This document shows positions 8,676-55,220 of a DNA stretch of 64,000 bases, piece by piece. The position numbers were made by a program, and so were the translations under genes. The stretch's first letter is position 1. Every line of letters begins with the position of its first letter. The notes under the pieces are model-generated. The model saw only the letters and a list, made by a program, of their open reading frames with translations, ran no database searches and was not told where the DNA came from. The stretch comes from Octopus sinensis (Eukaryota): NCBI RefSeq assembly GCF_006345805.1, contig NC_043021.1:17546001-17610000 (forward strand), written 5' to 3'.

Positions 8676-10493
8676 TTTGACTTTCGTAAATTAAAAGTAA
8701 ATTCGCCGCAGAAGGAATTTGAACGTCAGGTGGTGGAAGCGTAAACATGATATATTCTTTTCTACTCTAGGCACAAGGCAAGAAATTTTGGGTGAGGTCG
8801 GGGGGGGGGGGGTCTAATCGATTCCCAAGCGATTAGATCGACCCCAGTACGTAACTGGTACTTAATTTGTCGACCTCGGCGGAATTTGAGTTCAGTAAAC
8901 ATAATATAGTATAACCTTAAAATATCATTAAGGTTGATGTTTAATGAATGTCGATAAATTTTAATAATCCTTTCTGCCGGAAAGTTTGGGATGCGGTGCA
9001 AATCGATTTTATCGATCAACTAGTATTTAATTTATTTATACGGAAAAGATGAACGGTAAAGTCTACCTCTGCAGTATTTGAACTCAGAACGTCAAGCCCG
9101 AAAAAAAAAAGAAGAAACAAACAAACAAAGAAAAAGGCCGTTAAGTAGTCTGTCCGGCTTGCTAAAGATTCTGTCAGCTCGTCTCGTAAGTGATAACGCA
9201 TGTCAAATACGAAACCGGATGTGACAAACACCTGATGGCACTACTACATAATACAGAATATATATTTTATACAATGCAGTATACGTATGTAAATCGGGTA
9301 TTTTCTAAATTTCAATGGTCAGAACTATTTATAATGGTGTTGGTGACCATAATACATGATAAGATCTAGATTTATTTAAGACAATAATTACTGAATTTGC
9401 TAAATGTATTCTGTGAAATCACTATAGGATTGTAGCAGCTACAGAGATATATATTTGTTGGGTAGCGTTTAAAATTTAAGACCATGCTTTTAAGGATCAT
9501 TTCTTAAGTATGTGTCGCAACGGTATCCGATTCCTTTGATCGGTCAACAACATCACGATGATGCGAGATCGTATTGAGTCCTGAGCGTGAAGCAGGATTT
9601 CCTCTATCGTTCGTTACTCCGCCTTCAACGAACGTGAGGAATCCATTGAAGATCGTTCTTGAGAGGTTTAAAAACTTCTTAAAGAGGGACTCGATACTTT
9701 CTGAGTGATGTTATTTTCTACTGAATTAACAACAGATTATGTTTTTCATATGACGGGCTTTGTAAATATCGGTTCTAAATACTGTCCATCCATTCGGGTA
9801 CGCTCTGTCTCGATCCGAAATGAATGAAGGAAGGGGGGGACAAGATTACGTCGTTCACGATGAAAGGCATGGTCGACCTCGACGGAATTTGTAGTTTTTT
9901 TTTTTTTATGGGGGTGGGAACCCAAGACTGGCTACTTGCGTTCTGAGTTCGAATCCTTGAATGTTAAGACTTATGAAGAAACAAAATCGAAAGGTAAAAA
10001 AACTAATTCATATTGAGAACTGAAATGGGGAGGGGAGAAAAAAGTCAAGGGGGCACATGGACACGGACACAAACACTCACACACACACGAACACAGATAC
10101 AAATGAACACTCACACAGACACAAACATACTCCCGCATATACACACACGCAGAGACGGACACAACCATACACACTCACACAGGCTCAAACACACACACTT
10201 GCAATACATACACACGTAAGCCCATGCACACATAGACACAGGGACGCACACACAGTCAAACACAAACACACACACTCACGCGCACACAAAATCCATGTGC
10301 TATAGTAGTAGTCACTTATAAAGGGAGAGAATAACATTGTAATTATCTCCCTGCATAAGTAAACGCTATTAACTTGTTTCCATGGAAAGTAGATTTTACC
10401 TGCTATATTAACAGATATTTAACATGCTCTCTCCGTCTCCTCTCTATCTATCTGTCCCTCCCCACTCTCTCTACATATATATATTTATCCTTC

Positions 10494-10528
<35 letters not shown>

Positions 10529-10877
10529 GAGTAGTTGAATGAATTATCTTATTAGGGATAATTCGAAAGATAACCGATACCTGGGTAGAAAATTCACATC
10601 AGAAAGAACACGGTTGAAGCTACGTCCCTCGGGCATAGACTACGTGTCTTCGTGCGGAAATTTGTATGTTTATTTTAAAATTATAAGTATATGAAAGAAT
10701 GGAGTTGAACGGCTAGTTAACAAATATCCTTTATTCTCGACATATGTTTCGAAGGCTGCATATTCCTAATTCCGAAGGAATAAGGAGTACATTATGCAGA
10801 TTTCTCATCAGGAAAATCAAGGAACTTATGTCGACATCAAAATGCACAAAAAACTTTTAGCTGACCGCTCTCAAGGA
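8676..10877 (+). repeat. Left arm of 5.3-kb inverted repeat
   Basis: Reverse complement of 11711-13976, checked at both ends and several internal points. Confidence 0.95.
10727..10823 (-). ncRNA. Type I hammerhead ribozyme motif, left-arm copy
   Basis: Exact reverse complement of 11765-11861. Confidence 0.7.
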
Positions 10878-11210
10878 ACCGATGTCTACTTCTACATTGG
10901 CGCAACCTCTTCTAAATTAGCCTAAAGGGTCTCAAACTATTATTTCACTTTCAGAGATAAGAGAAAGCAACACAGCACGGGGCTAAGCAAATTAGTCTGG
11001 CGTCTGAAGAACAATAACACTACGTTCAAGCTCGAATGATCCATTTTGTCGGTGTCCTTCCCGTTTGATAAAGGCAGAAAATTTTGTGGCATCTGTAATT
11101 CCGAACTTTTTCATATTTTGTTCGCCAAAGTCCCTTTAATAAACACAATCGTCGAAAGATCCTACAGGTGTTTACACTGGAAAAGACACACCTTTCACTC
11201 ATATAAATAG
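10875..11210 (+). mobile_element. Penelope-like element ORF 3' fragment (GIY-YIG endonuclease region), inactivated
   Basis: Translates as GTDVYFYIGATSSKLA*RVSNYYFTFRDKRKQHSTGLSKLVWRLK...E*SIL...KFCGICNSE...LIN...CLH; matches the PLE pattern YIG..R..NH..F..ST.LSK..W.LK..W.IL..C..C..E..LN..C.H; two in-frame stops. Confidence 0.85.
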
Positions 11211-12105: not shown

Positions 12106-13976
12106 ATATATATAATATATATATATATATGCAGAAGGATAAATATATATAGTAGAGAGAGTGGGAGGGACAGATAGATGGAGAGGGAGACGGAGAGAGC
12201 AGTGTTAAATATCTGTTAATATAGCAGGTAAAATCTACTTTCCATGGAAACAAGTTAAAATAGCGTTTACTTATGCAAGGGAGATAATTACAATGTTATT
12301 CTCTCCCTTTATAAGTGACTACTACTATAGCACATGGATTTTGTGTGCGCGTGAGTGTGTGTGCGTGTGTGTCCGTGTGTGTGTTTGTGTTTGACTGTGT
12401 GTGCGTCCCTGTGTCTATGTGTGCATGGGCTTACGTGTGTATGTATTGCAAGTGTGTGTGTTTGAGCCTGTGTGAGTGTGTATGGTTGTGTCCGTCTCTG
12501 CGTGTGTGTATATGCGGGAGTATGTTTGTGTCTGTGTGAGTGTTCATTTGTATCTGTGTTCGTGTGTGTGTGAGTGTTTGTGTCCGTGTGCCCCCTTGAC
12601 TTTTTTCTCCCCTCCCCATTCAGTTCTCAATATGAATTAGTTTTTTTTATTTTTCGATTTTGCTTCTTCATAAGTCTTAGCATTCAAGGATTCGAACTCA
12701 GAACGCAAGTAGCCAGTCTTGGGTTCCCACCCCCATCAAAAAAAAAAAAAAAAAAACTACAAATTCCGTCGAGTTCGACCATGCCTTTCATCGTGAACGA
12801 CGTAATCTTGTCCCCCTTTCATTCGTTTCGGATCGAGACAGAGCGTACCCGAATGGATGGACAGTATTTAGAATCGATATTTACAAAGCCCGTACTATCT
12901 GTCATATGAAAAACATAATCTGTTATTAGTTTAGTAAAAAATAACATCACTCAGAAAGTATCGAGTCCCTCTTTAAGAAGTTATTAAACCTCTCAAGAAC
13001 GATCTTCAATGGATTCCTCACGTTCGTTGAAGGCGGAGTAACGAACGATAGAGGAGATCCTGCTTCACGCTCAGGACTCAATACGATCTCGCATCATCGT
13101 GATGTTGTTGACCGATCAAAGGAATCGGATACCGTTGCGACACATACTTAAGAAATGATCCTTAAAAGCATGGTCTTAAATTTTAAACGCTACCCAACAA
13201 ATATATATCTCTGTAGCTGCTACAATCCTATAGTGATTTCGCAGAATACATTTAGCAAATTCAGTAATTATTGTCTTAAATAAATCTAGATCTTATCATG
13301 TATTATGGTCACCAACACCATTATAAATAGTTCTGACCATTGAAATTTAGAAAACACTCGATTTACATATATATACTGCATTGTATAAAATATATATTCT
13401 GTATTATGTAGTAGTGCCATCAGCTGTTTGTCACATCCGGTTTCGTATTTGACATGCGTTATCACTTACGAGACGAGCTGACAGAATCGTTAGCAAGCCG
13501 GACAGACTACTTAACGGCCTTTTTCTTTGTTTCTTTGTTTCTTTTTTTTTTTCGTGCTTGACGTTCTGAGTTCAAATACTGCAGAGGTAGAATTTACCGT
13601 TCATCTTTTCCGTATAAATAAATTAAATACCAGTTGATCGATAAAATCGATTTGCCCCGCATCCCAAACTTTCCGGCAGAAAGGATTATTAAAATTCATC
13701 GACATTCATTAAACATCAACCTTAATGATATTTTAAGGTTATACTATATTATGTTTACTGAACTCAAATCCCGCCGAGGTCGACAAATTAAGTACCAGTT
13801 ACGTACTGGGGTCGATCTAATCGCTTGGGAATCGATTGGACCCCCCCCCCGGACCTCACCCAAAATTTCTTGCCTTGTGCCTAGAGTAGAAAAGAATACA
13901 TCATGTTTACGCATTCCACCACCTGACGTTCAAATTCCTTCTGCGGCGAATTTACTTTTAATTTACGAAAGTCAAA
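11711..13976 (-). repeat. Right arm of 5.3-kb inverted repeat
   Basis: Reverse complement of 8676-10877. Confidence 0.95.
11765..11861 (+). ncRNA. Type I hammerhead ribozyme motif in a PLE pseudo-LTR
   Basis: CTGATGA 11777-11783; stem II GAA/TTC plus CTGCAT/ATGCAG; GAAA 11838-11841; C-ATAT-G minimal stem III; GTC cleavage triplet ending at 11849; stem I ccttgattttc/gagaataaagg. Confidence 0.75.
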
Positions 13977-16350: not shown

Positions 16351-16602
16351 ACTGTGGACAGTGAAGGTGTAATCTGAAATCGGGTTCAATACACTACAGG
16401 GCTGTAATTTGAAATCGGTTTTAGATTTCAAAGTGGTCACTTAAATTGAGGAGGTAACTTGAGATCTTAGCACCGGTGTGGTTCATTAAGGGAGATAATT
16501 CTGATTACCGTTTAGCGGTAGTTATCGTCCCTGATTCACCTCTACATGGAGAGTGGTGTTCCTCCGTCTGGTCGTCCTTGTATCAAGGTTGACCCCACGA
16601 AG

Positions 16603-16781
16603 ATGTTCTCCCGTTGTATCTTCCCCCGCCATTTACAGCAGGTCACTTTACAGATTAGAACACTGTCCCTTACTTCATCACAGACATGTTGCAAAAGCTC
16701 AGAAGAGCTGCGTACATTTAACAGCAGCACAACAACTCTTTATTCTTCGCATCAAACACAAATCTCTGTTCAACGAACCTC
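16603..16781 (+). CDS. MRPL47: MRPL47 exon 1, mitochondrial presequence-like
   Basis: MFSRCIFPRHLQQVTLQIRTLSLTSS..., Arg/Ser/Thr-rich and poor in acidic residues; donor TC|GTGAGT in phase 2 matches exon 2; in-frame upstream ATG at 16546. Confidence 0.75.
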
Positions 16782-22800: not shown

Positions 22801-22913
22801 AAACTGTCAGCACAGCCTTTCCGTTCGATCTCTGCACACAACTCCACCATGTTCCGATCTCATGGAATTCTTTGATGACAAAAAGAACTGGGGGAAAGAA
22901 ACCATCTCAACTG
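22801..22913 (+). CDS. MRPL47: MRPL47 exon 2
   Basis: Polypyrimidine acceptor ttttctccacag; encodes ...DLMEFFDDKKNWGKETIST, matching the MRPL47 EFFDDxKNWG motif; donor G|GTGAGT. Confidence 0.95.
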
Positions 22914-22947: not shown

Positions 22948-23447
22948 TCTATATATCACACAACTGTAGTTGTGTGAGTGTCTGTCCCCTTCGATTTAGA
23001 TTCCTAACTCCTCCCACATTTTGCGGTGCAGTTTAACCAAATTCGGGTATCTTATAGTCGTGATTCATGTCGAGTCCGTCTGGCTATTAGCGCGCGTGTA
23101 TGATGAGTCTACGATTTTAAAAATAATTTAACATCATTTTTTATTCCATTTTAATGCATAATTTTTCGTGTGTCGATGGCGGCGGAGTTGGCGTCCATGG
23201 TCACACCTGCACCTGTTTGCTTCTCCCCCTTCTTCCCTCCCTCGTGAAGCTGTAAGGAAATCAACGTCGTAAAGCGTTGTCAAGGAGACCAGCGTTCTTT
23301 TAGAACAACGACTTCATGGCTTGAAGACACCAAAACAGAAATGGCTAAGAAAGCCCGAATTGGCATCTATAAGGGGAGTAACTCTCTAAAAATGCTTATA
23401 TAGTTATTTCCCTTACAAACCCGAGCAACGCCGGGCGATACTGCTAG
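22948..23447 (+). mobile_element. Non-autonomous Helitron
   Basis: 5' TC after A; 3' hairpin cccgagcaacgccggg then CTAG|T; no TSD; related copy at 34153. Confidence 0.85.
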
Positions 23448-24029
23448 TTAGAAATAAATTGGAATTTAATAAAACATTTTTGGAAAAATTTTATATTCTT
23501 TAATTGGCCAAAGTAATAATTCCTGACCTCATTGATTGATTTAGATCTTCAACCAGGGTTTGTGGCCCGTGCATCATCATCATCACCACCACCACCATTA
23601 TCTGTAAATGGAGGTTTGGTGATTTTTGTGGCTCCTCCCAACATCTTTCTCCCTCTTTACCTTACCTTTCTCTCAACAAGGAGACTCCTTTACTAGCAAA
23701 TGTAGGTGTGGTCTGTCGATAACTCCTCCCACCATCACTTTCCTTCATCAGCAAATATAGGTGTGGTCAGACTATGACACATCCTCATCAGTAGATATTG
23801 TTTATAAGAAAAAAATAACCTGGTAATACTGAGGGTGAACTGCCATCATTCACCACCACTGACCATCCACCCCAGTTGTTGGCAGCAGATAATATTCAAA
23901 GCCCCATCATCCATCACCACCAAGCTACCTTCGTTGTGACCTTCATCCATCTCACCTTAGATTTATTCTAAAGAATAAAATAAATTTTGCAATGAAGTTA
24001 GAATGCTGACTTTGGTTCTTGTATTCCAG

Positions 24030-24090
24030 GACGTCCGTGGCACCTGGCAGAATTGAGACTGAAAAGCAATGAAGACTTGCACAAATTATG
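24030..24090 (+). CDS. MRPL47: MRPL47 exon 3
   Basis: GRPWHLAELRLKSNEDLHKLW (uL29-family KSNEDLHKLW motif); ccag acceptor, gtaagt donor, phases fit. Confidence 0.97.
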
Positions 24091-26121: not shown

Positions 26122-26918
26122 CCACATTGTAGTACCTACTTACAACTGGGTGGACTGTTCCACATTGTGGTACCTACTTACAGCTGGGTGGACTGTCCCA
26201 CATTGTGGTACCTACTTACAGCTGGGTGGACTGTTCCACATTGTGGTACCTACCTACAGCTGGGTGGACTGTTCCACATTGTGGTACCTACTTACAACTG
26301 GGTGGACTGTTCCACATTGTGCTACCTACTTACAGCTGGGTGGACTGTTCCACATTGTGGTACCTACTTACAGCTGGGTGGACTGTTCCACATTGTGGTA
26401 CCTACTTACAGCTGGGTGGACTGTTCCACATTGTGGTACCTACCTACAGCTGGGTGGACTGTTCCACATTGTGGTACCTACTTACAGCTGGGTGGACTGT
26501 CCCACATTGTGGTACCTACTTACAACTGGGTGGACTGTTCCACATTGTGGTACCTACTTACAACTGGGTGGACTGTTCCACATTGTGGTACCTACTTACA
26601 GCTGGGTGGACTGTCCCACATTGTGCTACCTACTTACAACTGGGTGGACTGTTCCACATTGTGGTACCTACTTACAACTGGGTGGACTGTCCCACATTGT
26701 GCTACCTACTTACAGCTGGGTGGACTGTTCCACATTGTGGTACCTACTTACAGCTGGGTGGACTGTCCCACATTGTGGTACCTACTTACAACTGGGTGGA
26801 CTGTTCCACATTGTGCTACCTACTTACAACTGGGTGGACTGTTCCACATTGTGCTACCTACTTACAACTGGGTGGACTGTTCCACATTGTGCTACCTACT
26901 TACAACTGGGTGGACTGT
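26122..26918. repeat. 38-bp minisatellite, about 21 units, in MRPL47 intron 3
   Basis: Unit ccacattgtggtacctacttacagctgggtggactgtt; the ORF translations repeat every 38 aa (3 x 38 nt). Confidence 0.97.
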
Positions 26919-28732: not shown

Positions 28733-29186
28733 GTACATCTTATTAAAGGAACGTAACATGTTGATGACAATGGAAGCTGAATACATCAGGCAAGCTGAAT
28801 TATTCCCAAACCCAGAACGATTGTTTAAAATTGATGAAAGCATGCAGAACATCCTAGAAATAGTGGCAGAAAGAGATGATGCTGTTAGCCTTTTGGAAAC
28901 AGGGAAATCTTGCAGACCCCAGTACAGAATGGTACGCAACTTCTTGGGACTAAAATACAGGCGCAAAGTGAAAGAGTATGCCGTACCATCTTGGATGAAT
29001 CTGCGATACCGTATGCTGCACACCCCTTTCATGAAGGGCTTGACTCCTTATTTTGGATTGTATTTTGAAAAGCAGCGTATGTTGGCAAAGAAACACCAAA
29101 AGAGACGACTTGATTATAAGAGAAAGCTAAAAAAAGAATTCCCTCATTTGGAACTTGAGAGTGAAGAGAGCAAACAGAGCATTTGA
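28733..29186 (+). CDS. MRPL47: MRPL47 exon 4 (terminal)
   Basis: WYILLKERNMLMT...PNPERL..IDESM...AERDDAV.LLETG...FPHL aligns from memory with the MRPL47 C-terminal half; acceptor ttttctttgcag; TGA at 29184-29186; AATAAA at 29487. Confidence 0.98.
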
Positions 29187-29448: not shown

Positions 29449-29612
29449 GTGTAGACTATACACAGTTAAATATTTACAATTTTATCAATAAAAAGTTTTT
29501 GACACAATGACCTATTTTGAAAGCAGTTTCATATTTCATTTAAAAGAAAATATGTTGGTTTATTTGCAAAGCTGCGTTTATACATACATAAATTTATACA
29601 TACATAAATTTA

Positions 29613-29845
29613 GGCGGCGAGCTGGCAGAACCGTTAGCACGCCGGGCGAAATGCGTAGCCGTATTTCGTCTGCCGTTACGTTCTGAGTTCAAATTCCGCC
29701 GAGGTCGACTTTGCCTTTCATCCTTTCGGGGTCGATAAATTAAGTACCAGTTACGCGCTGGGGGGGGGTCGATGTAATCGACTTAATTCGTTTGTCTGTC
29801 CCTGTTTGTCCCCTCTATGTTTAGCCCCTTGTGGGTAATAAAGAA
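29613..29845 (+). mobile_element. SINE family B, near-consensus copy
   Basis: ggcggcgagctggcagaaccgttagc head, B box gagttcaaattcc, family tail. Confidence 0.9.
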
Positions 29846-30033
29846 ACATATACATACATAAATTATTAGTATTATTAAGGCAGGTGAACTAACAGAAACA
29901 GGGTGGGATTGAACATGAAAACAGTTGTGAGACAAACTTCTTAATGACCCCCCCCCCTCCATGCCTAATCAAATCCTGTTGGGGGTCTAAAAACCCAAGG
30001 GTTAACTATGAATATAAATTAGAATTCTATGTT

Positions 30034-30419
30034 ACTCTTTTACTTGTTTCAGTCATTTGAGTGTGGCCATGCTGGAGCACCGCCTTTAGTCGAGCAAATC
30101 GACCCCGGGACTTATTCTTTGTAAGCCCAGTACTTATTCTATCGGTCTCTTTTGCCGAACTGCTAAGTGACGGGGACGTAAACACACCAGCATCGGTTGT
30201 CAAGCAATGCTAGGGGGACAAATACACACACACATATATATATATATATATACATATATACAACAGGCTTCTTTCAGTTTCCGTCTACCAAATCCACTCA
30301 CAAGGCTTTGGTCGGCCCGAGTCTATAGTAGAAGACACTTGCCCAAATGCCAAGCAGTGGGACTGAACCTGGAACCATGTGGTTTGTTAGCAAGCTACTT
30401 ACCACACAGCCACTCCTGC
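30034..30419 (-). mobile_element. SINE family A
   Basis: Family sequence on the minus strand. Confidence 0.88.
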
Positions 30420-31472
30420 ACCAATGTTGTTGACATTCTCAGAATATCTAAACTTTGAGAGAATGTAAAATAATTTGTTCATAACGGTTGAATAAGCAAT
30501 AAACCTATGAATTATAATAGTGTGTAGATTACATAACCGACCAGGTTATCAGGTGTTGTTACACATCACTGGTCACAATGCGCTTTTGCATTGTTTTAGC
30601 CCTTCAAATGACCCCACCTCACCCCTTTCTGGCTAAGCAAGCAGGCCAACACTCCCCTCTGACTGAGAGGAAGGATTGGAGCAATGTCAAATGAAGTGTT
30701 TTGCTCAAGAACAACAAGGCACCCACTCGGAGAATCGAACCTACAATCCAGCAATTGTGAGTGCAACTAGGCCATGCACCTAGTATAGATATCAGGGTAA
30801 AAACCCGATTTGGATAGTAAAAGGATAACTGCCATTTCTTGTAAGCATAATATCTGCTGTGTTTTCAGGAGGTGAAGGGTTTATGTCCCATAGGCAACCT
30901 TCATCCTTCCTTCTTTTTTGTAGCCAAAACAATATTTAACCCAATATTTTTCATTGTATTATAGCTTTATGTGCTTTGAAATACTGTTCCAAGAAACTTC
31001 CCAACTGGTTTCTAGGTTCAGTCCTGCTGTATGACACCTTTTGCATATGTCCCCTACTGTATAGCCTCCGGCCTTGTGAGTGGATTTACAAGGCAGAAAC
31101 TGAAAGAAGCCTGTCTTGTATGATTGGCATACGCGCACGTGTGTGTGTGTGTTTTTTTTGTCCCCCACCACTGCTTGACAACTGGTGTTGGTGTGTTTAC
31201 ATCCTCATAACTTAGCAGTTTGGCAAAGAGAGTGAGAGAGAGGGAAACTAATAGAATAAGAAACAGGTATATAAAGGAAAGAAGTCCCGGGGTCAATTCT
31301 TTCGACTAAAAATCCTGGAAGAATTTTAGTTGGAACAAATTGACCCCAGGACTTATTTTTTGCTAAGCCTGGTACTGATTCTATCAATCTCTTGTCAAAC
31401 TGCTAAGTTACAGGGATGTAAACAAGCTAACCTTTTGTCAAGCAGTGACAGAAGGATAAACAGACATTTTTA

Positions 31473-32245
31473 TATTGGGTTGGCAAAGAAAGTTCCTGCT
31501 GTTTTTTTTTTTAATTTTGGAATCTATTTTTTTCGAGAATTCTATTTTTGAATCATTTTGGAATCTTTTTTGTTTTGTTTTTTTTCTAGTTAATTTTAGT
31601 TAATTTTTGTTTATTTTCAGATCATTAAAATAATGGAGTTGTTTGTCCCCTCTATGTTTAGCCCTTTGTGGGTAATAAAGAAACATATACGTACATAAAT
31701 TATTAGTATTATTAAGGCAGGTGAACTAGAGGGGACAAACAACTCCATTATTTTCAGATCATTAAAATGGAGTTTCAACAATCGTTTTGGGTTTGGGAAT
31801 AATTCAGCTTGCCTGATGTACTCAGCTTCCATTGTCATCAACATGTTACGTTCCTTTAATAACAAACATTTTTGACACCTTTTTGCTTTTAATCAAGGTT
31901 CTAAGGCCACAAAAGCTACTCACGACATTTGCGCTGTGTATGGAGCGGGTGCCATAGCTGAAAGAACTGCTCGTGATTGGCATACCAAGTTCAAAACTGG
32001 AAATTTTGACCTCAAAGACGCACCTCATTCTGGCTGTGCAGTTGAGTTCGATGAAGAGTGATTAAACCAACTTTTGCATGAAAAGTCTCATCAAACAACA
32101 AGGGAACTGGCAGAGAAAATGGAATGCTCCCACACTGCTGTAGAGAAGCATTTTCACTCGATGGGAGCAGTTCAGAAGTATGGAGCATGGGTTCTGCATG
32201 CTTTAAGTGACAACAACAAAAATCGACGAGCCACAATCTCCGCTG
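31473..32245 (+). mobile_element. Mariner relic, 5' half, disrupted by templated insertions
   Basis: TIR-like tattgggttggcaaagaaagtt; transposase N-terminus FAFNQGSKAT..ICAVYG..AERTARDW..KFK.GNFDLKDAP.SG..TTRELAEKM..MG.VQKYGAWV.H.LS..NK..R. Confidence 0.92.
31777..31862 (-). pseudogene. 86-bp copied fragment of MRPL47 exon 4
   Basis: Reverse complement of about 28740-28825 with 2 mismatches. Confidence 0.95.
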
Positions 32246-33769
32246 AGATATATACATACATATATATATACATACACACAAACATATATGCACACACACA
32301 CACACACACACAAACATATACGACGGGTTTCTTACAGTTTCCCACTACCAAATCCACTCACAAGTCTTCGGTCAGCCTGGGATTATAGTAAAAGACACTT
32401 ACCGAAGGTGCCACACAGTAGGACTGAACCCGGAACCATGTGGTTGGTAAGCAAGCTACTTACCACACAGCTACACCTTTGGAGAAAGATTCCCCACCAC
32501 CTCAGTTCGTACAGCCACGCAGAATTTACTGTACTACATAGAATTAGGTATTTAACAACTGAAATTTAATAAAGCAAGATATACAGACAAGAAATAGTCA
32601 GAGATGATATAAAGAAAGCAAAATGAATTATACGTTTTAAAAAAATAAAAATATGTAAAAACGTAGTGTAGTTACCTCCCTTGGGTGAATGCAGCGTCTT
32701 CAGTATTTACCTCCCTTGTATTTTAGGCCCTGTTCACGAAGCGACTGTGGATAAGAGCGTTGTGTGTGAGCGGGCACTCACGTACGTGTGTGTGTGTGTA
32801 CATTTTCTTTTATTTCTTTACTGCCCACAAGGGACTAAACACAGAGGGGACAAACAAGGAGGACAGACAAAGAGATTAAGTCGATTGCATCGACCCCAGT
32901 GCGAAACTGGTACTTTATTTATCGACCCCGAAAGGATGATAGGCAAAGTCGACCTCGGCGGAATTTGAACTCAGAATGTAACGGCAGACGAAATACGGCT
33001 ACGCATTTCGCCCGGCGTGCTAACGTTTCTGCCAGCTCGCCGTACATAGTCATATAATCGACCGCACACCAAAATCGCCCGCAATTCCAGGTCTTCAGGT
33101 TAACTGAGTGGGTAGCAAATTGCAAGATCAGAGAGCCAGGCAATTAAGAACTTTGACCATACCTCCGTTGTACCCGTTATACGATTACAAGAAGGGTACT
33201 AAGATTAAAATAGGGATTAACTGTACTTTGAAACTGTGGTTTGACAGGAAAGTTTAAGGTGTCGTGTCGTCAACATGGCCATTTCCCAAGACTTATGGCG
33301 ATTCCACTTATATGGAATATCAACAGTCAACAGAAATGTGTGTTAGCGGGTTCTTGTGAGACGGGTTTAGTTGCAAAGTAGAATCTACAACAGTTGGAAT
33401 GTTTAGTGGTACTATATATTTTTTTGTTTATTGCCCACAAGGGGCTAAACATAGAGGGGACAAACAAGGACAGAGAAAGGGATTAAGTCGATTACATCGA
33501 CCCCAGTGCGAAACTGGTACTTTATTTAATCGACCCCGAAAGGATGAAAGGCAAAGTCGACCTCGGCGGAATTTGAACTCAGAACGTAACGGCAGACAAA
33601 ATACCGCTAAGCATTTCGACCGGTGAGCCAACGTGTCTGCCAGCTCACCGCCTGTTTAGTGGTACTATATAGTGTACTTCTGCCTAGTTCTACTAAGAAA
33701 CACCAGCTGCGTGTAACATCACTGGACGAGGAGAATGTGACCTCGTGTATACCGTTGGCGATTTTTTTT

Positions 33770-34152: not shown

Positions 34153-34551
34153 TCTCTATATATAAAAGTCAAGTTGTGTGTCTGTCTACTCCGATTTAGA
34201 TTCCTAACTACTTCCACATTTTGCGGTGCAGTGTAACCAAAAGTGGGTATCTTATAGTCGTGATTCATATCGAGCCGTTCTGGGTATTAGCGCGCGTCTA
34301 CGATGAGTCTACGATTTTTTTTAATAATTTACCATCATTTCTTTCCATTTTAATGCATTTTTTCGCTATTATATAAGGGAAGTAACTCTCTAAAAATGTC
34401 TACGATGAGTCAACGATTTAAAAAAAAATTTACCATAATTTTTTTTCCATTTTTAATGCATTTTTTTGCTATTTTTTGGCTATAACTCTCTAAAAATGCT
34501 TATATAGTTATTTCCCTTACAAACCCGAGCAACGCCGGGCGATACTGCTAG
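34153..34551 (+). mobile_element. Non-autonomous Helitron, same family as 22948
   Basis: A|TC start; identical 3' end with hairpin and CTAG|T. Confidence 0.85.
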
Positions 34552-34779
34552 TAGAAGATAAGAGATGACAGAGAAATAAAAGATGTGATTTAAGCTGGTT
34601 TATCTTCTGTCAACCCACGTATGACCGTGTGGGTCCTTACAAGAAGTACAAGTTCAGTTACAATCGGCTCATTTGTTGTCTTGCAGTAAAAGGGACACTA
34701 TGATGGACCCTCAACACTGCTTCCTACCATCCCATTTTATCAGCAAGATCCTTGATTTGTCTCTCCACGAGTGTAGTGG

Positions 34780-35299
34780 GTGCTTTTTATGTGCCACCTG
34801 CACAGGTGCCAGGGGAGTCTGGCATCGGTCACAACCGGTTGGAGCTTTTAACGTGCCACTGGCACGGAAGCCACATTCGGATGGTGCTTTTTATGTGCCA
34901 CCTGCACAGGTGCCAGGGGAGTCTGGCATCGGTCACAACCGGTTGGAGCTTTTAACGTGCCACTGGCACGGAAGCCACATTCGGATGGTGCTTTTTATGT
35001 GCCACCGGCACAGAAGCCAGTCGAGGTGGCGCTGGCATCGGCCACGTTCAGATGGTGCTTTTTATATGCCACCGGCACAGAAGCCAGTCGAGGCGGCGCT
35101 GGCATCGGCCACGTTCGGATGGTGCTTTTTATGTACCACCGGCACAGAAGCCAGTCGAGGCGGCGCTGGCATCGGCCACGTTCGGACGGTGCTTTTTATA
35201 TGCCACCGGCACAGAAGCCAGTTGAGGCGGCGCTGGCATCAGCCACGTTCGGATGGTGCTTTTTATGTACCACCGGCACAGAAGCCAGTCGAGGCGGCG

Positions 35300-35300
<1 letters not shown>
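34780..35300. repeat. Tandem array derived from SINE-D interior: 2 x 104 bp, then about 5 x 67 bp
   Basis: tgctttttatgtgccacc recurs at 34781, 34885, 34989; gatggtg recurs every 67 nt from 34984. Confidence 0.9.
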
Positions 35301-35333
<33 letters not shown>

Positions 35334-37636: not shown

Positions 37637-38076
<440 letters not shown>

Positions 38077-38935: not shown

Positions 38936-39340
38936 GGGCGATCTTTCGTCTCTAGTAGACCTTTCCGTCGATTTCCGTAAAAATTTTTTTTATTTTTTTA
39001 CATATGGGCTTGCGGGAACTTTTGAAGTAATATACATACATATACACATACACCGAGTAAAAAATTTCAGTTATTTCTTTCTTTCACACATTACTCTGTC
39101 TCTTCACACACACTAACAGAAGCACTTCACTTACACAACATACTGTCTGTCTCCCACACCCCATCAAACACACACACACATGTACATCAATGCTTCCCAT
39201 GCACGGTAACTTCAAAAGAACTTCCCTCGTCATACAATCGCTTTCTCTTAGTCTCTTTCGCTCTCATTACTTCAAAAGTTCCCGCAAGCCCATATGTAAA
39301 AAAAAAAATGTTTTTACGGAAATCGACGGAAAGGTCGCCC
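38936..39340. mobile_element. MITE upstream of the UBXN10-like gene
   Basis: About 75-bp inverted repeats (gacctttccgtcgatttccgtaaaaa...gggaacttttgaagtaat); termini gggcga/tcgccc. Confidence 0.75.
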
Positions 39341-47730: not shown

Positions 47731-48842
47731 AATTGGAGTAAATAGAAGCAATCTTTAAAAGAAAATTTAGTTTTATAGTAAAATAATGAATTGTATCATA
47801 AAATCTTGTTCCTGACAAGTCTTGGAATTAAAGGTAAAAAAAATTCAAGTTTGGAAACAGATTGAGTTTTTATCAATAATTTTAGAACCGTTTCTAATAT
47901 CTATATAAAACTCAACTTTTGTGCGTGTGTGTGCGCGTGTGTGTGTATCTGTGTGTGTGTGTGTTTAACTTCCCGGCACATCTGGCCAACAAATCGTAGA
48001 ACCACCAAAAATGGGTCACTTAAAGTTTAGGCGAATGAAAATTGAACTGCGCTATTTCTGTTCCAAAATTCATTTCGCAAGTGCAAAAATCGATAATGTG
48101 TTTGTTTAGGCCTTATCCCATGCATTGAATAGTGAACTTCACTCAGTCAGCTGTTTGACGTGAACTGTGTTCACCACGCGTGCAAGCATGCGTAAATTGC
48201 ATGAAAAATAAAAAATAAAAATATAAAAACGAATCGCCGTAAACATTGTAGAAATTCGGCAAAGAAATGAATTTTCGGAATGTAGCCTGGAGGGTTTTTT
48301 CGTATTAACCGTTTGGACTTTGTGAACACATACCAATTCTTTTCATAACATTTTTAACGCTTTGAATTAAATGTGACCATTTTGCGTTGAGTCTGAAGTT
48401 TGAATCACTTTAACCAAATTTTAGCAGCCCAGATTTTTGATCATCACGATACATTGCCAGTGACTCCCTGAAACCCCGTTGAGAAATCTATTATATATAT
48501 ATAGAATAATACTTTGAATGTGACTCCTGAGAAAGGGTAAAAGTAATTATCCGATGAACGACGGGTATTACTGCTAGTTCTATATAATTGTATAGAGTAC
48601 ATTGGATTACTAACTGTAAGGACTTTTGTATACACAATTCTAATCTGATGTGTGCATATGCACACACACACACAATTCTACCCTGGTGCATAGAGGATTC
48701 TGTTCTAGTGTGTATAACATATACACAATCTTACTCCAGTGTATGAATAGGATTCCAGCGTTGATATTCTAGTTGCCGCCATTACATTTACCAATATTTA
48801 TGTTGTAGACATTTACTAAGAATATGCTAAACTTTTTTTCAG

Positions 48843-49456
48843 ATGATTTCCTGATTAATGTCACCCGACCAAAGTCTTCCTCCCTGTCCAGATATAAACC
48901 ACTGCCAGCCATAAAGCCAAAGTTTACGACGCCAACACCTAGAGATATCCATGTTATACCAACTGACACCTCAGACACAACAGTGGACATGGATTCTTGT
49001 CAAGTCAAAGATACAGAATTCTTTGAGTTCTATAGAAGCAAAAACAAACATTTTGATACAGTTCTCAATCAGTCAGCATCTCCAAGAAGTTTGCCATTAA
49101 ACCTCCGTTTCGAAGAGAATGATGGTTTATCTTCAGACACTGAACCTGATGAAAAAACTTCCAATACTTTGGTGGTAGCACCAGAATGTGTTGGGCAAAA
49201 TATTCTATTGGCAGTAAAATTACCCAACAGTCAGCGAATTCAGAAATGTTTCCATCCAGATGAAACTTTCCGAGCAGTGCGTCAGTTTGCCGAACATGAG
49301 AGCGGTGAGAATTTGTCCGACTATCAGTTGGTTTGTAACATGCCTCGGGTCCTACTTGATTTGGACACCACAATACGGGACAACGGACTTTTAGACAAAA
49401 CATTGCTGCATTTAGAACATTCTGGAACATTCAGAGATCATAAACTACAACATTGA
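48843..49456 (+). CDS. UBXN10: UBXN10-like terminal exon with UBX domain
   Basis: TRPKS and SSLSRYKPLPAI recall UBXN10 (RPKS, SSLNKYPVLPSI); C-terminal LLAVKLPNSQRIQKCFHPDET...MPR...DNGLLDKTLLHLE is a UBX fold (about 49199-49417); acceptor ttttttttcag; spliced total 1047 nt is in frame. Confidence 0.8.
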
Positions 49457-52400
49457 ATGGTTTCACTTGGCGAGGTTTAAATAAACGTCCTATACCAGAC
49501 CTGGCTTTTAGTTCAGAATGGATGAAGAGGAATGACAAGTCATGCTATAGCTAATAATGGTGACCAATAAGCCATGAGCAAGACGTGGCCAAAGATGACC
49601 AAGCAGACAGTTTCTAGGAAGCTTTGAAACAATGAAATCTTTTGGCAGAGTCCAGGCTTTGCTTGTCTACATTTGTGACTTTTTAATTAGTAATTTAAAA
49701 CAAGTAAAATAATTCAGAATTCTGTGAATTCCAAAGAATTTTAAAAGAAACAAAAGAAAAATATTAAAATATGATTGTATTTTGAAGAATTCTTGATATT
49801 TCCAACAACTTTAGAAAAATATGGAAATAATCTGCCTTATCTGCTCACAATTTTCAGTTTTTGTAGCTTTATTCTGGAATAAATCAGGATTAATTCTAAA
49901 GTCGTCAGGAATAACCATTTTACAAAGATTTTACTGAAGTGGGCACTGAACAATTTATTTTCCTTTCACCCAAAACTTGACAAAGACCAATCTTTCTTTA
50001 GACATTACACCTCCTGCTTTGACAGGAATATTTTTTTCAACAGAAAATTCTGAATAAAGTTTGTCTAACCACCAAAAACGTCTCCACACTCGAGAACATA
50101 TTTCAATATACCTGAAGTTGGTACTTCATATTAAAAGGTTCCTTACTATTACAGACTCCCTTCCCACTCACCCACCCCTCTTATTTTCATCCCTTCAACT
50201 AACCAGAAATGTTCTTTTGAAAAAACAAAAAAAATCTTTTCTTGATATGTGTTGAAGCACTGAAGAATTCCTGTGTATGGAAGAATGTTTTCACTCGAGA
50301 GGAAAAAAATTAAATTGCATTCTTCTGAGTTTCAGGAATTTGAGAAAACAAATCATAAATCTTCTTCCAATTCCTTAAACTTTACAATATTTTCAGTGTT
50401 ACAGCACTTCTATATTCCTGGAGACCCCAGGGGTGAGAGAGAGCTGAACTAGTTCCAGGGTAGATTCAAGCAAAGTGTCTCCTTGCTGCCAAGGTAAATA
50501 TCAAGAATTCCTGCTTATATCTTCAACACTGAAGAATTTTTATGCCTCCAAAAGTCATTTCAAAGAATTCAAGCCATGATGTCTTATTAAATGAGGAAAT
50601 ATTTCTCATCCAATAAATTGTTTTTGTAATATTTTCCGGGCCAGCAAGGTTTGAACATTTTGACAAACGCTGGCAACCAGAGGGCAGCACCAAGCTCCAT
50701 TATCTGCTTTGAAATGGATGTTCTTTTGTTTGTTTTACTGCTAAATGCTGTAATGGCAACCCCTTTGCTGGGTGTGCTGGGTCCTTTTTTTTCCATTACA
50801 TGACATTGCCACCAGTGACAACAACAAGTAACTCACAAGACAAGAGCCCTCAACTGAAGGGTGTGTCATAATATAGAAGGTGGCTTTATGACAGGTAAGG
50901 AGAGGTTAAACTATGAATAGAAAAACAGGTACAGGTGTGTGATTGATAAATGAGATCCACATTCACCCCAGGAGGAAGAAAAAGATAACCAACCAGCATT
51001 TCAGACTTCTCTTAAGATATGACAGAACAGTTACTGTTAGGTTGGGCCAAAAGTTTTGGAATTTTTCCAGAAAGGAGAAATTCATTTGAGATTTTCCTAA
51101 TCCAATGTCCCTCAAGTGAGCAAAACCTATCTAGAAAAACAGGTACAGGTGTGAGGTTGATGAGATCCACATTCACCCCAGGAGGAAGAAAAAATAGCAA
51201 ACAAACATTTTAAGCTGCTCTAAGGCAATGGATGCGACCCTAATATTCCTAGTTAGATGGAAACTGCGGATCCACATGGTGCAGTGCCCTGTGACATAGT
51301 ATACACAACCGAAACCCTTATGAAGGGGTGTCCTAGATGAGATAATCCAATGTCCCTCTCTCAGGTGATCAACAAAACCTATCTGGCAACCACTACACAC
51401 CCATTCATACCATTCTTGCTAAGATTATTGCATCAAGTGCTTTAAATTTATCCAGTGTATATATTTTAATAGAAAAAGTGTTTAAATGTTAGCATTGTTA
51501 CAACCGTTTGGTAACCGAACTGGGTTTGTTGGATTAGCAGCAGATATTAGAAGCTGGAATTAGCAAACAGTTGGGACCCCCTTCGGTCACGACACTGACC
51601 ATGGGATTGCACCTAGAAGGTTACCCTCCTAGTCACAAGTCTGGGCAAGGTGGTTTATGGAAGACCAGCAGTCGCCCATGCATACCGGCCTCCCCTCTCC
51701 ACGCCACCAGTGTTATCCAAGGGAAAGGCAAAGGGGCCCAATACAGCTTGGCACCCGTGACGTCGCAACTCATTTCTACAGCTGAGTGAACTGGAGCAAT
51801 GTGAAATAAAGTGTCTTGCTCAAGAACACAACACGCAGCCCGGTCCGGGATTCGAGCTCAAAACCTCACGATCATAAGCTCGATGCTCTAACCACTGAGC
51901 CATGCGTACAAACAGTACACTATAGCTATAACACTAAATTTGGGAACAACATTAAATGGGTGATGGTGGTTATTTGATGAAGTATCAACCACTGGTCTAA
52001 TGATGAAGTAAAACAGCAACTGAGTCCACCCTGCCCACCTCTACTGAAGTCAACACCAGATCCTATAAAGGACAGAATCAGAAATGCTGTTTTTTTTTTT
52101 GCTTTTTTTTCAAAATAAAAATCAGTAACACAAAGCACATTAACATAATTTTTGATTTAGACTCAAGACCGGCAATTTTAGTTGATTACCCCAGCCCCAA
52201 GTATATGACTGGTACTTTGACCTTTAAAAGATGAAAAGCCAAGTTAACCAAGGTTTGAACCATAAAGAGCCAGAACATACAAAGAATTTTGTCCAAGATT
52301 TTAATGATTCTTAATGCACCGTGATATAAGGAATACCTATTTCATTATTACCCACAAGGGGCTACACAGAGGGGACAAAAAAGGACAGACAAAGGGATTA

Positions 52401-55016: not shown

Positions 55017-55220
55017 ACGGGCTGTACGACAACCCTGATGACTACAGAAGTGGCAGAGACGTGGAGTGGAGAAAGCAGTGTTAGAGCAGTCGACGGAAGA
55101 GAAGTACACTGTGAAGGCGTTACAGATGCACGGATTGTAGTGCAGGGACTACAGCTGACGCTGCGAGCGATTGTGGTTGGTCACTTGGTGGACGAGATTA
55201 ACGTGGTGATGGGGATGGAT
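55017..55220 (+). mobile_element. LTR-retrotransposon (Gypsy-type) aspartic protease fragment
   Basis: TGCTTTL...VRAVDG..V.C.G...LVDEINVVMGMD; the catalytic Asp lies at or just before the junction and is missing. Confidence 0.65.

What the first reader, a model, noticed from the sequence alone, without database searches (positions are those of the whole stretch)
31611..31870. Multi-step templated insertion that captured MRPL47 coding sequence inside a mariner
Seen, in order: mariner 5' UTR; an 89-bp copy of 29803-29891 including unique flank (31640-31728); a perfect 28-bp snap-back of the junction just made (31727-31754 is the reverse complement of 31627-31654); a restart in mariner (ttattttcagatcattaaaa repeated at 31611 and 31748); an 86-bp reverse copy of MRPL47 exon 4 (31777-31862); return to the transposase frame. 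The switches show short overlaps. Known: this pattern is typical of polymerase-theta end joining or microhomology-mediated template switching. Inferred: one germline repair event sampled templates 2-3 kb away. If transcribed on the + strand, it gives RNA antisense to MRPL47.
Basis: partly seen in the sequence, partly recalled or inferred. Interest (0 to 1): 0.78.

Follow-up and report, generated by a model that had tools for sequence, protein, structure and literature searches.

The report
Patchwork repair scar in octopus mariner
A dead mariner transposon just downstream of an octopus MRPL47 gene carries a roughly 220-bp patch stitched from two nearby sequences, a fold-back copy and a re-copied piece of itself; it is a clear but ordinary case of a DNA break mended by a polymerase that hopped between templates.

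Summary
The patch sits in a 5' mariner fragment (31474-32245), 2.3 kb downstream of the MRPL47 stop codon.

It contains five parts:
- an 89-bp copy of a SINE-tail/flank junction (donor 29803-29891);
- a perfect 28-nt fold-back of the junction just made;
- a re-copy of 31 nt of mariner;
- an 86-bp inverted copy of MRPL47 exon 4 (donor 28740-28825);
- loss of 9 bp of mariner.

The junction overlaps are 0-1, 2-3, 7, 2 and 2 nt.

Four other octopus mariner copies are uninterrupted at this point. The orthologous Octopus bimaculoides locus lacks the donor SINE and the whole mariner block. The exon copy also carries window-lineage bases. The event therefore happened in place, after that split.

The best reading is one serial template-switching repair of a break inside the transposon. 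This is the 'transposition-independent gap filling' already described for animal Pack-TIRs. The polymerase (Pol theta or another) cannot be assigned, and there is no evidence of function. I could not check raw reads or a closer sister species.

Verdict: real, correctly interpreted, a new member of a known kind, of modest interest.

The parts
31474..32245 (+). Host element: the 5' part of a decayed mariner. It has a TA plus 5' terminal inverted repeat, the 5' UTR, and a transposase N-terminus with in-frame stops. It is truncated at 32245 and has no 3' TIR in the window.
   Evidence: HTH_48 E=1.7e-13. 79 mariner/SETMAR-like hits, best 83% to O. bimaculoides. 88-92% DNA identity to copies L001, L002, L004 and L005. 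31474-31518 matches the reverse complement of the 3' end of the full-length copy L005 (4517-4471, 83%). No downstream mariner remainder was found.
31611..31639 (+). Copy 1 of the mariner 5' UTR/start codon (…TTATTTTCAGATCATTAAAAT[AAT]GGAGT), ending at junction J1. It contains a derived extra AAT within 31629-31634.
   Evidence: Alignment to four other copies (A3) and junction tracks. The AAT is absent from all other copies and from copy 2, but present in the fold-back arm.
31640..31728 (+). Segment B: a direct copy of 29803-29891. It comprises the last 44 bp of a SINE, that SINE's 16-bp target-site duplication, and unique flank.
   Evidence: 87/89 identity. The flank 29848-29891 is unique in the window apart from this copy. 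Both differences are derived in B, judged against the SINE consensus, the upstream TSD and O. bimaculoides.
31727..31754 (+). Segment C: a fold-back (snap-back), the perfect reverse complement of 31627-31654, which is the J1 junction itself. It overlaps B by TA (or TAG if the donor then read CTAG, as O. bimaculoides does).
   Evidence: 28/28 complementarity. DNA fold -37.3 kcal/mol, z = -8.2 versus shuffles. Junction tracks. O. bimaculoides reads CTAGCAG.
31748..31778 (+). Segment D: a re-copy of the mariner (TTATTTTCAGATCATTAAAATGGAGTTTCAA) with normal spacing. It overlaps C by 7 nt (TTATTTT) and runs 5 nt further into the mariner than copy 1 did.
31777..31862 (-). Segment E: an inverted copy of MRPL47 exon 4, nt 28740-28825. 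It overlaps D by AA and the resumed mariner by AA, and replaces 9 bp of mariner (GTTAAGAAA).
   Evidence: It shares three window-specific bases with the window exon (96.7% identity, versus 93.3% to the O. bimaculoides exon). All three differences are derived in E.
31861..32245 (+). Resumed mariner transposase sequence (…AACAAACATTTTTGACACC…). It includes a 6-bp deletion relative to other copies, about 17 bp to the right of the last junction.
29803..29891 (+). Donor 1: the 3' end of a SINE (29612-29846, flanked by the target-site duplication ATACATACATAAATT) plus downstream flank.
   Evidence: The SINE is absent at the orthologous O. bimaculoides site.
28740..28829 (+). Donor 2: an internal part of MRPL47 coding exon 4 (exon 28733-29186, the last coding exon).
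   Evidence: PF06984 E=4.9e-27 on the spliced exon 3+4. Four-exon model calibrated on the 288-aa O. bimaculoides gene.

Best explanation
**What it is.** A DNA break arose inside an already resident mariner copy, between …ATGGAGTTTCAA and GTTAAGAAA|AACAAACATTTT…. It was repaired in place by synthesis-dependent end joining, in which the growing 3' end changed template five times.

**Proposed order of steps (inferred):**
1. The left 3' end, trimmed to …ATGGAGT, primed with 0-1 nt of homology on the SINE/flank junction 1.75 kb upstream and copied 89 nt.
2. It dissociated, folded back on itself through TA(G), and copied 26 nt of its own strand, including the junction just made.
3. Its new end, TTATTTT, re-annealed 7 nt-for-7 nt to the mariner's own complementary strand (or the sister copy).
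4. It primed by AA on MRPL47 exon 4, 2.9 kb upstream, on the opposite strand, and copied about 84 nt.
5. It annealed by AA to the right-hand end, 9 bp having been lost, and the gap was sealed.

**What is shown and what is inferred.**
- Shown: the five junctions, their overlaps, the direction of copying, the local and lineage-specific origin, and the absence of the inserts from other copies.
- Inferred: a single event, a two-ended break rather than a stalled fork, the order of steps, and an error-prone Pol theta-like polymerase.

The product is a neutral scar in a dead transposon. It equals the 'transposition-independent gap filling' that produces single-copy Pack-TIRs in animals.
For: - **Segments and junctions:** the coordinates and identities are verified.
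- **Direction for donor 1:** the donor SINE is full length with its own TSD, and the 45-bp flank is otherwise unique in the window.
- **Direction for donor 2:** it is a conserved coding exon.
- **Pre-event sequence:** four other family copies (three from O. bimaculoides, one from O. sinensis) are uninterrupted. They define it as …CATTAAAATGGAATGTCAAGTTAAGAAAAAYRAGCATTTT…. That exposes a 9-bp loss, the extra AAT and a nearby 6-bp deletion.
- **A fixed obstacle or end:** the mariner template was left twice within 5 nt (after ATGGAGT and after TCAA).
- **Microhomology:** it exceeds chance. P(at least 4 of 5 junctions with 2 nt or more) is about 0.004, and a 7-nt overlap alone has P of about 0.0008.
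- **Local, post-split origin:** the orthologous O. bimaculoides locus (L003) has MRPL47 and the UBX gene in the same order. It lacks the donor SINE (empty site) and the whole 30471-32494 block containing the mariner. The exon copy carries three window-lineage bases.
- **Error-prone synthesis:** all five copy/donor differences are derived in the copies and none in the donors. That is about 1 per 35 nt, close to the roughly 1/30 error rate reported for Pol theta templated inserts (PMC5068794).
- **Known pattern:** single-copy Pack-TIRs show donors mostly under 5 kb away, median microhomology of 2 bp, a small gap in the TE, and internal breakpoints (PMC8277862).
Against: - No reads, second haplotype or closer sister species could be examined. 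The pre-insertion allele is therefore inferred from paralogous copies, and an assembly error is not formally excluded.
- Two pieces of 86-89 nt copied from 1.75-2.9 kb away are much longer and more distant than typical Pol theta inserts, which are under 25 bp with 85% primed within 10 bp. The enzyme assignment is weak.
- A stalled-fork (FoSTeS/MMBIR) route gives the same product.
- The J1 and J4 base assignments are ambiguous by 1-4 nt, because this copy's own pre-event sequence is unknown.
- The extra AAT is not explained by a simple realignment.
- The 5:0 asymmetry of differences is not significant once exon constraint is allowed for. For the neutral donor 1 alone it is 2:0.
Confidence: 0.55

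Rival explanations
1. The same single-event serial template switching occurred, but at a stalled or collapsed replication fork (FoSTeS/MMBIR) rather than at a two-ended break joined by end joining. The nascent strand left the mariner template at a lesion, sampled nearby single-stranded templates in both orientations, returned twice, and finally resumed 9 nt downstream.
For: Multiple switches, 2-7 nt microhomology, cis templates within 3 kb and both orientations are all classic for FoSTeS/MMBIR and for short-range template-switch mutations (junctions). Two departures 5 nt apart fit a fixed replication block as well as they fit a break end. Segment lengths of 86-89 nt fit replicative or BIR polymerases better than Pol theta.
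Against: There is no associated larger copy-number change. The cluster of small errors (AAT gain, 6-bp loss, 5 substitutions all in the copies) suggests a low-fidelity repair polymerase, though MMBIR is also mutagenic. Sequence alone cannot separate the two routes.
Confidence: 0.25
2. Two independent events occurred a few bases apart. The first was an insertion of B+C+D (a replication template-switch returning 27 nt upstream). The second was a separate 9-bp deletion with an 86-bp exon-4 filler.
For: B+C+D alone is a self-contained event with no net loss of mariner sequence. E plus the 9-bp loss is a self-contained deletion-insertion. The mariner A-rich tract GTTAAGAAAAA could be a recurrent fragile spot.
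Against: It requires two rare events within 5 bp of each other, both drawing on templates 2-3 kb upstream on the same side, and with similar copy/donor divergence (2/89 and 2-3/86-90). None of four other copies shows either change.
Confidence: 0.1
3. Abortive gap repair after transposase-mediated excision. The mariner was cut out, the gap was refilled from the sister chromatid from both ends, and the two nascent strands picked up filler before meeting.
For: Filler DNA and microhomology at internal breakpoints are known products of abortive gap repair of cut-and-paste elements, including Tc1/mariner miniaturisation (PMC3814204, listed). It is also one of the models discussed in PMC8277862.
Against: The gap in the element at the filler is only 9 bp, and the breakpoint is internal. 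Tan et al. take that pattern as arguing against excision-initiated repair. The copy has in-frame stops and no 3' TIR in the window. However, the order of truncation and filler capture is unknown.
Confidence: 0.05
4. RNA- or retrotransposition-based origin. B would be a 5'-truncated retrocopy of the neighbouring SINE with 3' transduction, flanked by a 27-bp target-site duplication. E would be a reverse-transcribed MRPL47 mRNA fragment.
For: B keeps the SINE 3' end. Copy 1 and copy 2 of the mariner look like a long target-site duplication around B+C. E lies wholly within one exon, so an mRNA template cannot be excluded.
Against: - There is no tail at B's 3' end.
- B's 3' end is joined to a reverse copy of B's own 5' junction. 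That junction must therefore have existed first, which is the opposite of target-primed reverse transcription.
- The 'duplication' differs by 3 bp.
- An AATAAA sits about 300 bp after the stop, well upstream of donor 1. That argues donor 1 is outside the mature MRPL47 mRNA.
Confidence: 0.02
5. Assembly or library artefact (a chimeric consensus).
For: Fold-back chimeras with microhomology are typical in-vitro artefacts. I could not examine reads, and exact-ORF look-ups found no independent assembly.
Against: The copies differ from their donors by five substitutions and no indels, whereas an in-vitro chimera would be identical to its donors. The structure is internally coherent, with a 9-bp deletion at exactly the place defined by four paralogues. 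Chimeric single reads rarely survive consensus.
Confidence: 0.03

Closest known systems
Single-copy Pack-TIRs made by transposition-independent gap filling (Tan et al. 2021, Nat Commun, PMC8277862)
   Same: Host-gene and non-TE sequence is captured inside a TIR transposon (here Tc1/mariner). The donors are in cis and under 5 kb away, junction microhomology has a median of 2 nt, only a tiny part of the TE is lost, the breakpoint is internal, and the capture happened after the TE was resident.
   Different: - The 3' end of the element is missing, so it fails their two-terminal criterion.
- Each filler is under 100 bp.
- One donor includes a SINE, and their pipeline excludes parental copies flanked by TEs.
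- There are two donors plus a fold-back and a self re-copy, not one filler.
- No mollusc was named in the text of that paper.
Polymerase theta-mediated end joining with templated inserts and snap-back synthesis (van Schendel et al. 2016, PMC5068794; Kent et al. 2016, PMC4912351; SD-MMEJ, Yu & McVey 2010, PMC2943611)
   Same: Reiterated priming, extension and dissociation. Priming on 1-2 nt. A reverse-complement insert copied from the same end. Composite inserts. A high error rate in the copied tracts.
   Different: Documented inserts are mostly under 25 bp and about 85% are primed within 10 bp of the break. Only about 3% map to distant sites. Here two tracts of 86-89 nt come from 1.75 and 2.9 kb away. 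POLQ dependence is untestable here.
FoSTeS/MMBIR and short-range template-switch mutations (Löytynoja & Goldman 2017, PMC5453318; Osia et al. 2021, PMC8421209)
   Same: Serial microhomology-guided switches to nearby templates in either orientation. Creation of a perfect hairpin by copying the opposite strand.
   Different: There is no accompanying duplication or triplication of flanking DNA. The short-range model covers the 28-nt fold-back, but not the kilobase-distant pieces.
Templated sequence insertion polymorphisms, class 2 (Onozawa & Aplan 2016, PMC5110952)
   Same: Short stretches templated from elsewhere in the genome are inserted at a repaired break without LINE hallmarks (abstract only).
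   Different: Those donors are usually distant or on other chromosomes and are often thought to be RNA-derived. Here both donors are local, and one is probably untranscribed.

Membership tests
Tc1/mariner (Mos1-like) transposon (host element) | Transposase N-terminal HTH (Pfam HTH_48) with homology to mariner transposases | tested here: met
   PF17906 E=1.7e-13. 79 hits annotated mariner Mos1 / SETMAR-like.
Tc1/mariner (Mos1-like) transposon (host element) | Terminal inverted repeats at both ends, flanked by a TA duplication | tested here: inconclusive
   The 5' end is TA + TTGGGTTGGCAAAG…. It matches the reverse complement of the 3' end of the full-length copy L005. No 3' TIR exists in the window, because the copy is truncated at 32245.
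Tc1/mariner (Mos1-like) transposon (host element) | DDD/DDE catalytic domain (Pfam Transposase_1) | tested here: not met
   The mariner homology stops at 32245, before the catalytic domain. Relatives such as P0013 do have PF01359. This copy is a dead fragment.
Pack-TIR (operational definition of Tan et al. 2021) | Non-TE sequence flanked on both sides by parts of one TIR element | tested here: met
   There is mariner on both sides of 31640-31862.
Pack-TIR (operational definition of Tan et al. 2021) | Both flanks reach within the terminal 10 bp of the consensus element | tested here: not met
   The 3' terminus is absent.
Pack-TIR (operational definition of Tan et al. 2021) | Internal sequence of 100-5000 bp with one unambiguous parental copy at 90% identity or more; parental copy not flanked by TEs | tested here: inconclusive
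   The composite is about 222 bp, but it has two parents of 89 and 86-90 bp at 97-98%. They are unique within the window, but uniqueness genome-wide is not testable. Donor 1 itself includes a SINE.
Pack-TIR (operational definition of Tan et al. 2021) | Gap-filling signature: cis donor, microhomology, small internal gap, TE resident before capture | tested here: met
   The donors are 1.75 and 2.9 kb away. Overlaps are 0-1, 2-3, 7, 2 and 2 nt. The gap is 9 bp. Residency before capture is inferred from the copy's own sequence being re-copied as segment D.
Pol theta-mediated end joining (TMEJ) templated insertion | Short microhomology priming and reiterated extension, including snap-back | tested here: met
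Pol theta-mediated end joining (TMEJ) templated insertion | Templates in the immediate flanks of the break; inserts usually under 25-30 nt | tested here: not met
   Segments C (26-28 nt) and D (24-31 nt) fit. B and E (86-89 nt, 1.75-2.9 kb away) do not.
Pol theta-mediated end joining (TMEJ) templated insertion | Genetic dependence on POLQ | not testable with these tools
   It would need a POLQ-deficient germline and induced breaks.
FoSTeS/MMBIR | Two or more template switches with microhomology, nearby templates, either orientation | tested here: met
FoSTeS/MMBIR | Origin at a one-ended break or stalled fork; long-tract conservative synthesis | not testable with these tools
   Nothing in the sequence discriminates this.
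LINE-mediated SINE retroposition with 3' transduction (considered for segment B) | 3' tail at the priming junction, target-site duplication directly flanking the insert, 3' junction formed first | tested here: not met
   There is no tail. B's 3' end is joined to a reverse copy of B's own 5' junction. The flanking direct repeats differ by 3 bp.
MRPL47 / uL29m (donor 2) | Pfam MRP-L47 domain, conserved exon structure and synteny | tested here: met
   PF06984 E=4.9e-27. The four-exon model parallels the 288-aa O. bimaculoides gene, with a UBX gene downstream in both species.

The most novel reading that the evidence does not exclude
The inverted 86-bp copy of exon 4, lying on the same strand 2.9 kb downstream of the exon, may be co-transcribed with MRPL47 by read-through. 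It would then pair with the coding exon as a near-perfect 86-bp RNA duplex. The adjacent 28-bp perfect hairpin could add to this. In a coleoid cephalopod, such a duplex could act as a newly born editing-complementary sequence for ADAR, or as a source of small RNAs against MRPL47. A repair scar would then have created a regulatory element in one step.
Probability: 0.03. Interest if true: 0.6.

Novelty: new member of a known kind. Interest (0 to 1): 0.3.

Why it matters
It is a clean, fully resolvable natural example of a five-junction templated repair event. Both donors are still present next door, and an outgroup locus polarises every base change. It is therefore useful as a teaching case, or as a benchmark for pipelines that detect template switching or Pack-TIRs.

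It also shows that this mutational class operates in a cephalopod germline, and that it can copy tracts of nearly 90 nt from kilobases away.

It does not reveal a new mechanism or a new kind of element, and nothing indicates that it affects MRPL47.

Tried and rejected
- **Octopus MRPL47 in the protein database:** a search with the exon-4 peptide returned only three distant fragments. That route to orthologous loci therefore failed.
- **Independent assemblies:** exact look-ups of 11 window ORFs, including the 82-aa ORF spanning the whole patch and its start variants, found nothing.
- **Proteins not on record:** look-ups of P0008 and P0083 returned no gene on record. The cluster mate P0085 worked and gave the orthologous locus.
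- **Spliced MRPL47 look-up:** No closer sister species or second assembly could be compared as a result.
- **Other copies of the patch:** I searched for the composite, the donor-1 flank and the exon piece in the L001 and L002 octopus loci. Only the mariner parts matched. Alignment A3 shows that L004 and L005 also lack the inserts.
- **Alternative template for the extra AAT:** a search for short words around it found none in the window.
- **tRNA scan:** no genes found.
- **SINE retroposition with 3' transduction:** I considered reading the 27-bp direct repeat as a target-site duplication. I rejected it because the fold-back copies the 5' junction.
- **MRPL47 mRNA as a common template for both donors:** this is unlikely, because a poly(A) signal lies between the stop codon and donor 1 and the two pieces have opposite orientations.
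- **Dating the event from copy/donor divergence:** this is unreliable, because all five differences sit in the copies and may be synthesis errors.
Full report

Yes.
- Positions 31640-31728 equal 29803-29891 at 87 of 89 bases.
- 31727-31754 is the exact reverse complement of 31627-31654 (28/28).
- The 20-mer TTATTTTCAGATCATTAAAA occurs only at 31611 and 31748 in the whole window.
- 31777-31862 is the reverse complement of 28825-28740 with two mismatches. BLAST extends it to 31773 / 28829, giving 87/90.
- BLAST E-values of about 1e-38 to 1e-39 and a perfect 28-nt inverted repeat leave no room for chance.
- The single-stranded DNA fold of 31600-31790 is -37.3 kcal/mol, against -13.2 ± 3.0 for shuffles.

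**2. What are the pieces?**

*The host is a mariner.*
- The translation after the patch matches Pfam HTH_48 (the HTH domain of Mos1 transposase, E=1.7e-13).
- It also matches 79 mariner/SETMAR-like proteins, the best from Octopus bimaculoides, O. vulgaris and O. sinensis.
- It starts at a TA followed by TTGGGTTGGCAAAG… (31474). This stretch matches, in inverted orientation, the 3' end of a full-length O. bimaculoides copy (L005).
- It has in-frame stops and ends abruptly at 32245. No remainder or 3' TIR is found in the window.

*Donor 2 is MRPL47.*
- Pfam MRP-L47 scores E=4.9e-27 on exons 3+4.
- I reproduced the 288-aa, four-exon O. bimaculoides gene model from locus L003 and transferred the splice sites. 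The window gene is then 16546-16781, 22801-22913, 24030-24090 and 28733-29186.
The copied part lies wholly inside it.

*Donor 1 is a SINE end plus unique flank.*
- It spans the last 44 bp of a roughly 235-bp SINE (29612-29846) that has at least 10 copies in the window.
- It also spans 45 bp of flank that has no other copy in the window.
- That flank begins with the SINE's own 15-16-bp target-site duplication, ATACATACATAAATT.
- In both cases the direction of copying is unambiguous: donor to mariner.

**3. Where is it?**

It is not inside MRPL47. The stop codon is at 29186 and an AATAAA lies at 29489. The mariner starts at 31474. The next gene is a UBX-domain gene whose large exon is at 48824-49456.

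**4. What did the mariner look like before?**

Four other copies of the family were recovered: three from O. bimaculoides and one from O. sinensis. All read without interruption as …TTTATTTTCAGATCATTAAAATGGAATGTCAAGTTAAGAAAAAYRAGCATTTTCAACACCTCCT.CTTTTTGC… (alignment A3).

Against this, the window copy has four changes:
- an extra AAT in the first copy of CATTAAAAT(AAT)GGAG. The fold-back arm also carries it, but the second copy does not;
- the B-C-D insert;
- a 9-bp loss (GTTAAGAAA), replaced by the exon piece;
- a 6-bp deletion about 17 bp to the right of the last junction.

None of the four paralogues carries any of the inserts.

**5. Junctions**

| Junction | Switch | Overlap |
|---|---|---|
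| J1 | mariner …ATGGAGT / TGTTTGTCC… (donor 1) | 0 nt, or 1 if this copy had T where the family has G |
| J2 | donor 1 …GAACTA / TAGAGGGG (fold-back) | TA, or TAG if the donor then read CTAG as O. bimaculoides does |
| J3 | fold-back …CCATTATTTT / TTATTTTCAG (mariner) | 7 nt |
| J4 | mariner …TCAA / AACAATCG (exon, reverse) | AA (imperfect TTTCAA) |
| J5 | exon …TTTAATAA / AACAAACATTTT (mariner) | AA (imperfect AATAA) |

I drew random switch points from the same 3.8 kb. At least four of five junctions with 2 nt or more occurred in 0.4% of trials. A 7-nt overlap occurred in 0.08%.

**6. Comparative evidence**

The UBX exon is 90% identical in protein to O. bimaculoides LOC106869085. The window therefore comes from another Octopus species.

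The O. bimaculoides locus (L003) is colinear with the window at 87-95% nucleotide identity in blocks. Three results follow.
- The donor SINE is absent there. The site is empty, reading …GTTTATACATAAATCATTATTAGTTTTATTAAGGCAGGTGAACTAGCAG….
- The whole block 30471-32494, including the mariner, is absent. The O. bimaculoides sequence runs …gagagaatgtaaaac|accacctcag….
- The exon copy shares three bases with the window exon that differ in O. bimaculoides. Identity is 96.7% to the window exon versus 93.3% to the O. bimaculoides exon.

The patch was therefore made in place, in the window's lineage. It was made after the SINE had inserted next to MRPL47 and after the mariner was resident. The absence of the mariner block from O. 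bimaculoides could also be a deletion there. The empty SINE site cannot be.

**7. Base changes**

All five copy/donor differences are derived in the copies.
- For E, the window exon and the O. bimaculoides exon agree at all three sites.
- For B, the donor agrees with the SINE consensus at one site. At the other it agrees with both the upstream target-site duplication and O. bimaculoides.

That is about one change per 35 copied bases, with none in the donors. It is close to the roughly 1/30 error rate reported for Pol theta-templated inserts in C. elegans (PMC5068794). It suggests that at least some differences were made during synthesis. The asymmetry is not significant once selection on the exon is considered (2:0 for the neutral donor). 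It does mean that divergence cannot be used to date the event.

**8. Mechanism**

The simplest account is one repair event with five template switches, set out step by step under 'best explanation'.

Two features point to a physical end or a fixed block just after …TCAA:
- the mariner template was left twice within 5 nt;
- the second pass (segment D) has the family's normal spacing. It was therefore copied from an intact template and not from the already altered first copy. That template could be the complementary strand of the same end, on which synthesis would run off exactly at the break, or it could be the sister chromatid.

I therefore favour a two-ended break repaired by synthesis-dependent end joining (0.55). 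A fork-based FoSTeS/MMBIR route is next (0.25). The two cannot be separated from sequence.

Pol theta fits the fold-back, the 1-2-nt priming, the reiteration and the errors. Tracts of 86-89 nt copied from 1.75 and 2.9 kb away do not fit. Its documented inserts are mostly under 25 bp, and about 85% are primed within 10 bp of the break. I leave the polymerase open.

Other rivals:
- two independent events 5 bp apart (0.10);
- excision-initiated abortive gap repair (0.05). This is disfavoured by the 9-bp gap and the internal breakpoint, by the criteria of PMC8277862;
- retroposition or RNA templating (0.02). This is contradicted by the fold-back copying the 5' junction and by the poly(A) signal upstream of donor 1;
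- assembly artefact (0.03). This is disfavoured by the substitutions between copies and donors.

**9. Comparison with what is known**

The closest described kind is the single-copy 'Pack-TIR' of animals.
- Tan et al. 2021 (PMC8277862) found 370 TIR transposons carrying captured host sequence in 100 genomes.
- They concluded that single-copy cases arise by transposition-independent gap filling.
- In those cases donors are mostly under 5 kb away, median microhomology is 2 bp, the gap has a median of 4.6% of the element, and breakpoints are internal.

This case works the same way. It fails their operational definition on three points:
- the 3' terminus is missing;
- each filler is under 100 bp;
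- one donor includes a SINE.

It is more composite than their typical case, with two donors, a fold-back and a self re-copy. The 28-nt fold-back on its own is a textbook short template-switch mutation (PMC5453318).

**10. Function**

None is indicated. The patch is intergenic, in a dead transposon. The short ORFs across it are mechanical. Rfam finds nothing there.

The geometry is an inverted exon copy on the gene's own strand, 2.9 kb downstream, next to a perfect hairpin. It would allow an exon:copy RNA duplex if MRPL47 transcripts read through. I give that 3%.

**11. Limits**

No reads, no second haplotype and no closer sister species could be consulted. The pre-event sequence is inferred from paralogues. 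'Unique' means unique within 64 kb plus about 65 kb of other octopus loci.

**12. Verdict**

It is a new member of a known kind. Interest is 0.3.

Noticed in passing
window 6303-6534 (+), 9478-9709 (+), 12946-13177 (-): There are three full-length U3 snoRNA genes (Rfam RF00012, about 126 bits each). Two of them lie in the arms of a 2.3-kb inverted duplication (8666-10884 versus 13986-11704, 93.9% identity, 820-bp spacer). Both sit upstream of MRPL47 exon 1.
   Followed up: partly
window 23379-23457 and 34483-34561: An 80-bp direct duplicate at 97.5% identity has a perfectly identical core of about 70 bp and sharp borders. One copy is in MRPL47 intron 2. The other is 2.2 kb to the right of the mariner. 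It could be a second short templated copy from the MRPL47 locus, or a rare repeat. It was not found in the L001 and L002 octopus loci.
   Followed up: partly
window 31878-31880 (relative to alignment A3): There is a 6-bp deletion (ACACCTCCTTCTTTTTGC becomes ACACCTTTTTGC) in the mariner, about 17 bp to the right of the last junction. The extra AAT lies 9 nt to the left of the first junction. Both are absent from four other copies. They may be flank scars of the same repair.
   Followed up: partly
window 29612-29846, 30034-30423, 30471-32494, about 32800-33042; compared with L003 7400-8100: Several SINE/TE insertions are absent at the orthologous sites of O. bimaculoides. The distance from the MRPL47 stop to the large UBX exon is 19.6 kb here, versus about 7.5 kb there. 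The intergenic region has grown about 2.5-fold by repeat insertion since the two species split.
   Followed up: partly
window 29612-29846 (+) versus 32813-33042 (-) and 33423-33653 (-): Copies of the same SINE, about 90% identical and in inverted orientation, bracket the mariner at a 3-kb spacing. An inverted pair like this is a plausible source of fragility or of template proximity, but this was not tested.
   Followed up: no
window 26122-26918: A 38-bp minisatellite of 21 copies with 96% matches lies in MRPL47 intron 3. It gives spurious ORFs of up to 350 aa.
   Followed up: yes
window 37637-38075: There is a (GTGC)n microsatellite of about 110 copies. Tandem arrays of 67 and 104 bp lie at 34779-35301.
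   Followed up: yes
protein hits: The mariner N-terminus is 76-80% identical to proteins annotated in a bee (Habropoda laboriosa) and a mite (Dinothrombium tinctorium), and 64% identical to one in Hydra vulgaris. It is 79-83% identical to octopus copies. This is the patchy distribution typical of horizontally transferred mariners.
   Followed up: no
window 52038-52293 versus 53976-54231; 53582-53724 versus 54875-55017; 38958-39031 versus 39336-39266: There are further low-copy duplicates: 256 bp at 96.5% and 143 bp at 95.8% (both direct), and 74 bp at 93% (inverted). They were not examined.
   Followed up: no
L003 6891-6900: The O. bimaculoides assembly has a short N-gap inside the poly-T tract just upstream of MRPL47 exon 4.
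   Followed up: no
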